Source of the DNA: Magallana gigas
Lineage: Eukaryota
Length of the DNA stretch: 64,000 nt
NCBI RefSeq assembly: GCF_963853765.1
Contig: NC_088855.1
Coordinates: forward strand, 37,634,001 to 37,698,000
Direction of reading: 5' to 3'
Shown: positions 29,656-30,285 of the stretch, piece by piece
Position numbering within the stretch: the stretch's first letter is position 1
How the letters are laid out: every line of letters begins with the position of its first letter
The notes under the pieces: model-generated
The model's input: the letters and a program-made list of their open reading frames with translations, nothing else
Told to the model about the DNA's origin: nothing
Database searches by the model: none
Made by a program: the position numbers and the translations under genes

Positions 29656-30285
29656 ATGGCAGATACAGCAACCACAACCCCAGCCAAGAAGAAGGTTACA
29701 AAGCCTAAGGTGCCAGCAGCGCACCCCAAGTACGTTGACATGATCAGGGCCGCCCTGGAATCTTTGAAAGAGCGTGGCGGATCTTCCAGACAAGCCATTC
29801 TAAAGTACATAATGGCCAACTACAAAGTCGGCAACGACGTCAACTCCATCAACGCCCACTTGAAAATGGCTCTGAAGAACGGAGTGAAGAAAGGTGCTCT
29901 GAAACAAGCCAAGGGCACAGGCGCCAGTGGCTCCTTCAAGCTTGGTGACAAGCCCAAGACTGAGAAGAAGCCAAAGGCCAAGAAAGTTGCCAAGCCTAAG
30001 GCAGCAAAACCCAAGAAGGCCGCAGCAGCAAAACCAAAGAAGGTAGCCGGAGAGAAAAAGACTGCAGAGAAGAAGAAGAAGTCCCCCCCAAGAAAGCAGC
30101 CGGACCGAAGAAGGTTAAGACTCCAAAGAAGAAGGCAGCAACTAAATCCCCAAAGAAGGCAGCAGCCAAGCCAAAGAAGGTCAAGACACCTAAGAAGTCA
30201 GCTGCAAAGAAAGCCAAGACTCCCAAGAAGGCAGCAGCAAAGAAATAAGCAATTCCAGCATCACTGCAGATTGCTCACTTTATAA
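29656..30285 (+). CDS. H1: Histone H1, unit 4, with a +2 frameshift (209 aa, Arg/Gln-rich C-tail). Real variant, pseudogene or sequencing error.
   Basis: The C5 tract of the other copies reads C7 at 30083-30089. The protein is identical to the others up to about residue 144, then shifts frame to a TAA at 30283-30285. Confidence 0.85.

What the first reader, a model, noticed from the sequence alone, without database searches (positions are those of the whole stretch)
29656..30285. Frameshifted H1 copy whose Lys-rich tail becomes an Arg-rich, protamine-like tail
Seen: C5 becomes C7 at 30083-30089 in unit 4 only. The normal 53-aa tail after Ser143 has 24 Lys and no Arg; the shifted 66-aa tail has 20 Arg, 15 Gln and 3 Lys, because AAG-AAG runs are read as AGA-AG. 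The globular domain is intact, the gene is intronless, and the new stop lies just before an intact stem-loop, so the mRNA should be processed normally. Known: a C-terminal H1 frameshift converting Lys to Arg is the mechanism proposed for the origin of Arg-rich protamine-like sperm proteins in the tunicate Ciona, and bivalve PL sperm proteins are H1-derived. Inference: this may be an incipient H1-to-protamine-like variant arising inside the canonical array. A homopolymer sequencing error is a serious alternative.
Basis: partly seen in the sequence, partly recalled or inferred. Interest (0 to 1): 0.72.

Follow-up and report, generated by a model that had tools for sequence, protein, structure and literature searches.

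The report
Frameshifted histone H1 copy in oyster
One of 13 otherwise identical linker-histone H1 genes in a Pacific oyster histone array has two extra C's that replace the end of its lysine-rich tail with an arginine/glutamine-rich one; it is most likely a very young, private and functionless mutation, or less likely an assembly slip, and nothing shows it to be an emerging sperm protein.

Summary
Window 30083-30089 is C7 in one H1 gene and C5 in the six other copies in the window. Genome-wide, 12 copies have C5 and one has C7. The globular domain and the 3' stem-loop are intact.

The protamine-like reading has no support:
- The gene, its promoter and its flanks are identical to the neighbouring copies, so the change is extremely young.
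- The Arg-rich frame is open in every copy, as a by-product of AAG/GCA codons.
- The new tail is less basic than the old one (35% against 46% K+R), matches no protamine family and loses four of five CTD S/TPxK sites.
- Its stop codon lies 7 nt from the stem, against 28-44 nt for normal histone genes.
- No other public run or protein record shows C7.
- The genome has 26 other array H1 genes and a separate SR-rich, H1-like gene.

The genome's size and scaffold number match xbMagGiga1.1 (HiFi, QV 59.7), which makes a +2 consensus error improbable but not excluded. The source reads could not be examined.

My estimates: about 62% a real, private, neutral frameshift allele; about 30% an assembly error; about 3% functional.

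The parts
29656..30285 (+). Frameshifted H1 open reading frame. It has 209 codons plus the stop; residues 1-144 are identical to the normal 196-aa H1 and residues 145-209 are read in the shifted frame.
29722..29946 (+). Winged-helix globular domain (residues 23-97), intact.
   Evidence: Pfam PF00538, E 4e-31, full profile 1-74/74
30083..30089 (+). C7 run. It is C5 in the 12 other copies of the array, so this is the +2 frameshift site.
30246..30248 (+). The original TAA stop codon, now out of frame.
   Evidence: alignment with the other units
30283..30285 (+). New TAA stop codon, 7 nt before the stem. It exists only because this block of units has T at 30283; units 1-6 and 13 of the array, and other individuals, have A there.
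30288..30333 (+). Histone 3' stem-loop and flanks (6-bp stem at 30293-30308), unchanged.
   Evidence: Rfam RF00032, 35.6 bits, the same as in unit 5; stem mapped
32287..32287 (+). A>T change private to this unit, 7 nt after the H3 stem. It is a linked marker for read-level tests.
3769..54500 (+). Seven units of the tandem histone array (H1+, H3+, H4+, H2B-, H2A+). Unit lengths are 8629 bp x3, 8632, 7763 and 7761 bp. This is the last part of a 13-unit array at C3:37.575-37.688 Mb.

Best explanation
This is a real but very recent two-base insertion, a CC slippage in a C5 run. It lies in one of at least 13 near-identical replication-dependent H1 genes of one Pacific oyster histone array, and it is private or rare to the sequenced animal.

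Shown:
- The copy is identical to its neighbours in promoter, coding sequence and 3' stem-loop.
- The shifted frame is open in every copy.
- The predicted product keeps the globular domain and the first 47 residues of the C-terminal domain. It replaces the last 52 Lys/Ala/Pro-rich residues with 65 Arg/Gln/Leu-rich ones.

Inferred:
- The copy is transcribed and 3'-processed together with its neighbours in dividing cells.
- It would supply at most about 1/27 of array H1 mRNA.
- It is translated poorly or terminated awkwardly, because the stop codon sits 7 nt from the binding site of SLBP (the stem-loop-binding protein).
- Any protein made is a minor H1 with an altered tail: similar net charge, but four of five CDK-type S/TPxK sites lost.
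- With 26 intact array H1 genes, selection barely sees it. It is an incipient pseudogene that drift, unequal crossing-over or gene conversion will remove. It is not a sperm protein in the making.
For: - Uniqueness and identity: C7 occurs once and C5 twelve times in the assembly. The H1 gene and its flanks are otherwise identical.
- The unit is genuinely distinct. It has its own SNP at 32287 and a private spacer microsatellite change, and it shares two variants with the following units.
- The assembly is clean here. Units 1-3 of the window are byte-identical over 8629 bp, including 72 homopolymers of 5 nt or more. A context-driven homopolymer error should hit all copies, because the context is identical.
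- The genome's size and scaffold number (564.0 Mb, 29 scaffolds) match xbMagGiga1.1, built from 48x HiFi reads with hifiasm at QV 59.7. That implies about 0.008 expected errors in the 7.7 kb of H1 coding sequence of this array (my arithmetic).
- Other private coding variants exist in the array, for example an in-frame loss of Gly8 in one H2A.
- Redundancy is high: 12 + 14 intact array H1 genes plus orphons.
- The shifted frame is open in all copies.
- Tail composition, charge and motif loss are, and the stop-to-stem distances are.
- H1 of this array type is highly represented in RNA runs, always as C5 where it can be read.
Against: - No read-level support could be obtained. Only Logan contigs of other samples were available.
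- All 20 holder runs (10 studies) held the same 5 of 9 sampled words, and none held the C7-spanning ones.
- Contigs of X3, X17 and X19 all show C5.
- A +2 change in a run of only five C's is also an uncommon mutation.
- The array is flanked and interrupted by 200-N gaps, so it is a hard region where local accuracy may be below the genome-wide QV.
- The shifted protein is on record only from this assembly.
Confidence: 0.62

Rival explanations
1. Assembly or consensus artefact. The animal has C5 in this unit as well, and the two extra C's come from an uncorrected read error that hifiasm carried into the contig in a repeat that is hard to resolve.
For: The change is a homopolymer-length change, the main PacBio error class. 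C7 words are absent from every indexed public run and from all readable contigs. The array is broken by two scaffold gaps. The unit also carries two other private changes, which could mark a thinly supported stretch.
Against: The QV is 59.7 from 48x HiFi coverage. HiFi consensus errors are typically +/-1 in long runs, not +2 in C5 (my knowledge). Twelve copies with identical context are all C5, and three neighbouring 8.6-kb units are byte-identical, so noise here is very low. Read correction inside a tandem repeat would pull a stray C7 towards the majority C5, not away from it (inference). One of the unit's private changes is a substitution, which is not a typical HiFi error.
Confidence: 0.3
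2. A functional, incipient protamine-like H1. The Arg-rich variant is made, enters sperm or other chromatin and is favoured, repeating the tunicate H1-to-protamine route.
For: The frameshift does convert Lys codons into Arg codons in an H1 C-terminal domain while keeping net charge (+22 against +24) and the globular domain. Sperm nuclear basic proteins (SNBPs) arose from H1 in tunicates (Lewis et al. 2004, as cited in PMC9917458). Bivalve PL proteins share ancestry with H1 (PMC5550673).
Against: There is no divergence, no altered promoter and no sign of selection. The allele is not found in other individuals or in sister species, which keep C5 and the Lys tail. The tail is 35% basic with 23% Gln and 14% Leu, so it is not protamine-like, and it has no Pfam match even at E<=1. 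The stop codon crowds the stem-loop. The genome already has a separate SR-repeat, H1-like gene that could be a sperm-type H1.
Confidence: 0.03

Closest known systems
Tunicate H1-to-protamine frameshift model (Lewis, Saperas, Song, Zamora, Chiva and Ausio 2004, PNAS 101:4148; paper not held here, content from my own knowledge, citation seen in PMC9917458)
   Same: A frameshift inside the Lys-rich C-terminal domain of an H1-type gene turns Lys codons into Arg codons.
   Different: The tunicate case is a fixed, diverged, sperm-expressed gene. This is a single undiverged copy in a somatic-type array, seen in one assembly only, and its tail is R/Q/L-rich rather than Arg-dominated.
Human H1.4 (HIST1H1E) C-terminal frameshifts of Rahman syndrome (PMC13385758, PMC10839353)
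   Same: A frameshift in the H1 C-terminal domain leaves the globular domain intact and yields a protein with an aberrant tail. This shows that such products can be made and can act on chromatin.
   Different: The human alleles reduce tail charge and act dominantly from one of a few expressed H1 genes. Here net charge is nearly kept (+22 against +24), and the copy is about 1 of 27.
Bivalve protamine-like (PL) sperm proteins (Eirin-Lopez et al. 2006, cited in PMC5550673)
   Same: They descend from H1 and are basic DNA-condensing proteins.
   Different: PL genes are separate, diverged, germline-expressed loci. This copy has none of those features.
Defective copies in tandem histone multigene families (birth-and-death evolution of H1, Eirin-Lopez et al. 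2004, cited in PMC5550673)
   Same: One member of a highly redundant array acquires a disabling change while its neighbours stay under purifying selection and homogenisation.
   Different: This case is caught at zero further divergence. The disabling change happens to produce a long, basic alternative tail rather than a truncation.

Membership tests
Linker histone H1 (PF00538) | Winged-helix globular domain | tested here: met
   Residues 23-97, E 4e-31, full profile
Linker histone H1 (PF00538) | Long Lys/Ala/Pro-rich C-terminal domain with S/TPxK sites | tested here: inconclusive
   The first 47 CTD residues are retained and the last 52 are replaced. CTD Lys falls from 45 to 24, Arg rises from 0 to 20, and CTD S/TPxK sites fall from 5 to 1.
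Replication-dependent histone gene | Intronless gene with a 3' stem-loop in a tandem H1-H3-H4-H2B-H2A unit | tested here: met
   RF00032 lies behind all five genes; ORFs and unit periodicity are.
Replication-dependent histone gene | Stop codon a few tens of nt upstream of the stem-loop | tested here: not met
   7 nt for the shifted ORF against 28-44 nt for the five normal genes
Protamine-like / sperm nuclear basic protein | Very high Arg+Lys content, higher than somatic H1 tails | tested here: not met
   The new tail is 35% K+R against 46% in the normal tail, with 23% Gln and 14% Leu. There is no Pfam match, protamine families included.
Protamine-like / sperm nuclear basic protein | Male-germline-specific expression and presence in sperm chromatin | not testable with these tools
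   No raw reads or proteomes were available. The upstream region is identical to the neighbouring canonical copies, which argues against special regulation.
Protamine-like / sperm nuclear basic protein | A conserved locus shared among individuals and related species | tested here: not met
   Only this assembly carries it. No run holds the C7 words, and contigs of a related species show C5.
Tunicate-type frameshift-derived protamine | Lys-to-Arg conversion by a CTD frameshift | tested here: met
Tunicate-type frameshift-derived protamine | Fixation followed by divergence under selection | tested here: not met
   There are no further differences from sister copies, and the allele is absent elsewhere.

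The most novel reading that the evidence does not exclude
The C7 allele is real, is transcribed and translated, and its Arg/Gln-rich H1 is incorporated into chromatin, sperm included. That would be a living, segregating example of the first step of the proposed H1-to-protamine transition, arising inside a canonical histone array of a bivalve.
Probability: 0.03. Interest if true: 0.7.

Novelty: new member of a known kind. Interest (0 to 1): 0.25.

Why it matters
If real, this is a tidy natural illustration of two points. The codon make-up of H1 tails keeps a long, basic, Arg-rich alternative frame permanently open, so a single slip yields a full-length basic protein rather than a truncation. 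Large histone arrays also tolerate such copies. Both points fit the frameshift model for the origin of protamines but do not test it. In practice, the 209-aa protein in public databases should be treated as a frameshift allele or possible error of a canonical H1. It should not be used as a new H1 variant or sperm protein in comparative work.

Tried and rejected
1. Read-level test. The look-up of sequencing runs returned no run of the source specimen as raw reads, only Logan contigs. Read laying showed C5 in X3, X17 and X19. X21 (dated 2023, with poly(A) signs) was ambiguous: 2157 of 4153 summed depth showed the 2-nt gap. I read the rest as short unitigs clipped at the C-run. A contig ends at 30060, four contigs are only partly laid, and the run holds only 1 of 9 sampled words. 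I therefore do not count X21 as C7 support. Contigs drop rare variants, so all of this is weak evidence of absence.

3. Exact-product look-up and cluster look-up found the shifted protein only in this assembly. Its 90% cluster mates are truncated normal H1 fragments.

4. A tail-only word search of 5.8 billion clusters gave nothing. Only cluster representatives are searched, and the query's own representative lacks the tail, so this negative is weak. I ran no further search on short fragments, because the shifted frame is open in normal copies and hits would be uninformative.

5. A metagenome-contig scan for C6-C9 found 0 matches, but the C5 control found only 1 contig, so the scan is uninformative.

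6. Earlier scan notes held nothing bearing on this locus.

7. The paper by Lewis et al. 2004 is not held, so its content is cited from memory.

8. Structure and complex predictions were not run, because a disordered tail would give nothing decisive.

Full report
THE OBSERVATION

The window holds seven tandem histone units. H1 start codons lie at 3769, 12398, 21027, 29656, 38288, 46051 and 53812, spaced 8629, 8629, 8629, 8632, 7763 and 7761 bp apart. Each unit carries H1(+), H3(+), H4(+), H2B(-) and H2A(+), and each gene is followed by an Rfam RF00032 histone stem-loop.

The fourth H1 (29656..30285) has C7 at 30083-30089. The other six copies have C5. Across -300..+620 of the gene this is the only difference among units 1-6.

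The shifted ORF has 209 codons and is identical to the normal 196-aa H1 through residue 144. The globular domain is a complete PF00538 match. The stem-loop at 30288-30333 scores the same as in the next unit.

THE GENOMIC SETTING

The assembly (564.0 Mb, 29 scaffolds) holds 13 copies of this H1, all in one array at C3:37.575-37.688 Mb. Twelve have C5 and one has C7.

- A second array on C2 holds 14 copies of a 92%-identical H1.
- Orphon H1 genes lie on C6 (two), C7 and C9.
- The C3 array is preceded by one 200-N scaffold gap and interrupted by another, so the true copy number may be higher.
- All 64 other histone genes I could read in the C3 array are unbroken. One H3 runs into a gap, and one H2A has an in-frame loss of Gly8.

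Protein look-ups name the species group as Magallana/Crassostrea. Size and scaffold number match the Darwin Tree of Life assembly xbMagGiga1.1 of the Pacific oyster. That assembly used 48x PacBio HiFi reads, hifiasm, YaHS scaffolding and one specimen, and has QV 59.7 (PMC11267148). In addition, contig C2 has the same length (61,469,542 bp) as the M. gigas record that carries the RefSeq H1-delta-like proteins.

IS THE INSERTION REAL?

This could not be settled, because the specimen's own reads were not available to the tools.

Evidence for a real insertion:
- Units 1-3 of the window are byte-identical over 8629 bp, including 72 homopolymers of 5 nt or more. Homopolymer noise in this stretch is therefore essentially nil.
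- The 12 other copies share the identical sequence context and are all C5, so a context-driven error is unlikely.
- The unit is a distinct entity. It has a private substitution (32287 A>T) and a private spacer microsatellite change, and it shares two variants with the units that follow it.
- QV 59.7 implies about 0.008 expected errors in the 7.7 kb of H1 coding sequence of this array (my arithmetic).

Evidence against:
- I queried a 107-nt stretch centred on the run. All 20 holder runs, from 10 studies, held exactly 5 of 9 sampled 31-mers, and none held more. This fits the four missing words being the ones that span C7.
- Contigs from a 2012 DNA run (X3), an RNA run (X17) and an RNA run of a related species (X19) all show two letters left out at 30083, that is C5.
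- A 2023 run (X21) was ambiguous. Half of the summed contig depth lacked the gap. Its contigs there are about 60-nt unitigs and it holds only 1 of 9 words, so I attribute this to clipped unitig ends.

Logan contigs drop minor variants, so these negatives show only that C7 is not common. They do not show that it is absent from the source animal. The shifted protein is on record only from a contig of 61,039,741 bp, which is the window's own C3. No cluster representative carries the tail (a weak test).

I put the real-allele reading at about 0.6-0.7 and the assembly error at about 0.3.

WHAT IT WOULD DO IF REAL

The promoter, the 5' region and the 3' processing signals are identical to the neighbours. 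I therefore infer co-expression with the canonical replication-dependent copies and normal nuclear 3' cleavage.

- RNA runs show this H1 type at high depth relative to the spacers. In X21, transcripts read through the stem-loop to an A-tract or poly(A) at about 30799.
- The product would keep the globular domain and 47 residues of the C-terminal domain. It would gain a 65-residue R/Q/L-rich end.
- Net tail charge is +22 against +24. The basic fraction falls to 35% from 46%. CDK-type S/TPxK sites in the C-terminal domain drop from five to one.
- The new stop is 7 nt from the stem. The five normal genes of the unit keep 28-44 nt. A terminating ribosome would overlap the SLBP site, so translation or mRNA decay may be disturbed. 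This is an inference from general knowledge of histone mRNA metabolism.
- The stop itself exists only because this block of units has T at 30283. Units 1-6 and 13 of the array, and the contigs of three other runs, have A there.

WHY THIS IS NOT A PROTAMINE-LIKE GENE IN THE MAKING

- The Arg-rich frame is open for 78-125 codons in all 13 copies, so the long basic tail is an automatic result of codon composition, not an adaptation.
- There is no divergence, no regulatory change and no presence in other individuals or species.
- The composition is not protamine-like, and there is no family match even at E<=1.
- The copy is about 1 of 27 array H1 genes.
- The genome also encodes a separate 271-aa H1-domain protein with long SR repeats and 38% K+R on C9. 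This is the kind of gene one would expect to be a sperm-type H1, though its expression was not tested.

COMPARISON WITH KNOWN CASES

The event is mechanistically the same first step as the tunicate H1-to-protamine frameshift model of Lewis et al. 2004. That paper is cited in PMC9917458 but is not held here, so the detail comes from my own knowledge.

It also resembles the human H1.4 C-terminal frameshifts of Rahman syndrome, which yield stable aberrant H1 proteins (PMC13385758, PMC10839353). Unlike those, it hardly changes net charge and sits in a highly redundant array.

It fails the tested defining features of PL/SNBP genes: composition, conservation and divergence.

VERDICT

The most likely reading is a very young, private, effectively neutral frameshift allele, that is an incipient pseudogene, with an assembly error as the serious rival. 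Interest is low to moderate.

The decisive test is simple and is named above: count C7 in the specimen's own HiFi, Hi-C and RNA reads.

Noticed in passing
window 44416-44440 (H2A of unit 5): One H2A copy has a private in-frame 3-bp deletion that removes Gly8 (GKGGKV becomes GKGKV). All other H2A copies in the window are identical.
   Followed up: partly
window 32287: An A>T change private to unit 4 lies 7 nt after the H3 stem-loop, between the cleavage region and the purine-rich downstream element. Its effect on H3 3' processing is unknown.
   Followed up: no
window 30283 and its equivalents in the other units: A T/A difference, with a variable A-run, lies just before the H1 stem-loop. It separates blocks of the array: units 7-12 have T, and units 1-6 and 13 have A. 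The A form is seen in three other runs. It decides whether the shifted frame stops before the stem-loop.
   Followed up: partly
L029:246-1058 (G000:C9, about 9.146 Mb): A 271-aa H1-domain protein with two long SR-repeat tracts at the N-terminus and 79 K plus 25 R. PF00538 matches at E 2e-22. It is a candidate sperm-type H1 or PL-I-like gene; its expression was not examined.
   Followed up: partly
G000:C2:20.12-20.22 Mb: A second histone array holds 14 H1 copies (199/200 aa, 92% identical). One unit is on the opposite strand, and an N-terminally truncated H1 lies at the strand switch (20181146-20181685).
   Followed up: no
G000:C3:37573649-37573848 and 37630849-37631048: One 200-N scaffold gap lies just before the array and another lies inside it. 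Three unit size classes occur in blocks (about 8825, 8629 and about 7762 bp). The array copy number in the assembly is probably a lower bound.
   Followed up: partly
window 30213-30799: In run X21 a 600-nt contig runs from the H1 tail through the stem-loop to about 30799, followed by loose A's. This suggests read-through, polyadenylated H1 transcripts, although the genome is A-rich there, so internal priming is possible.
   Followed up: no
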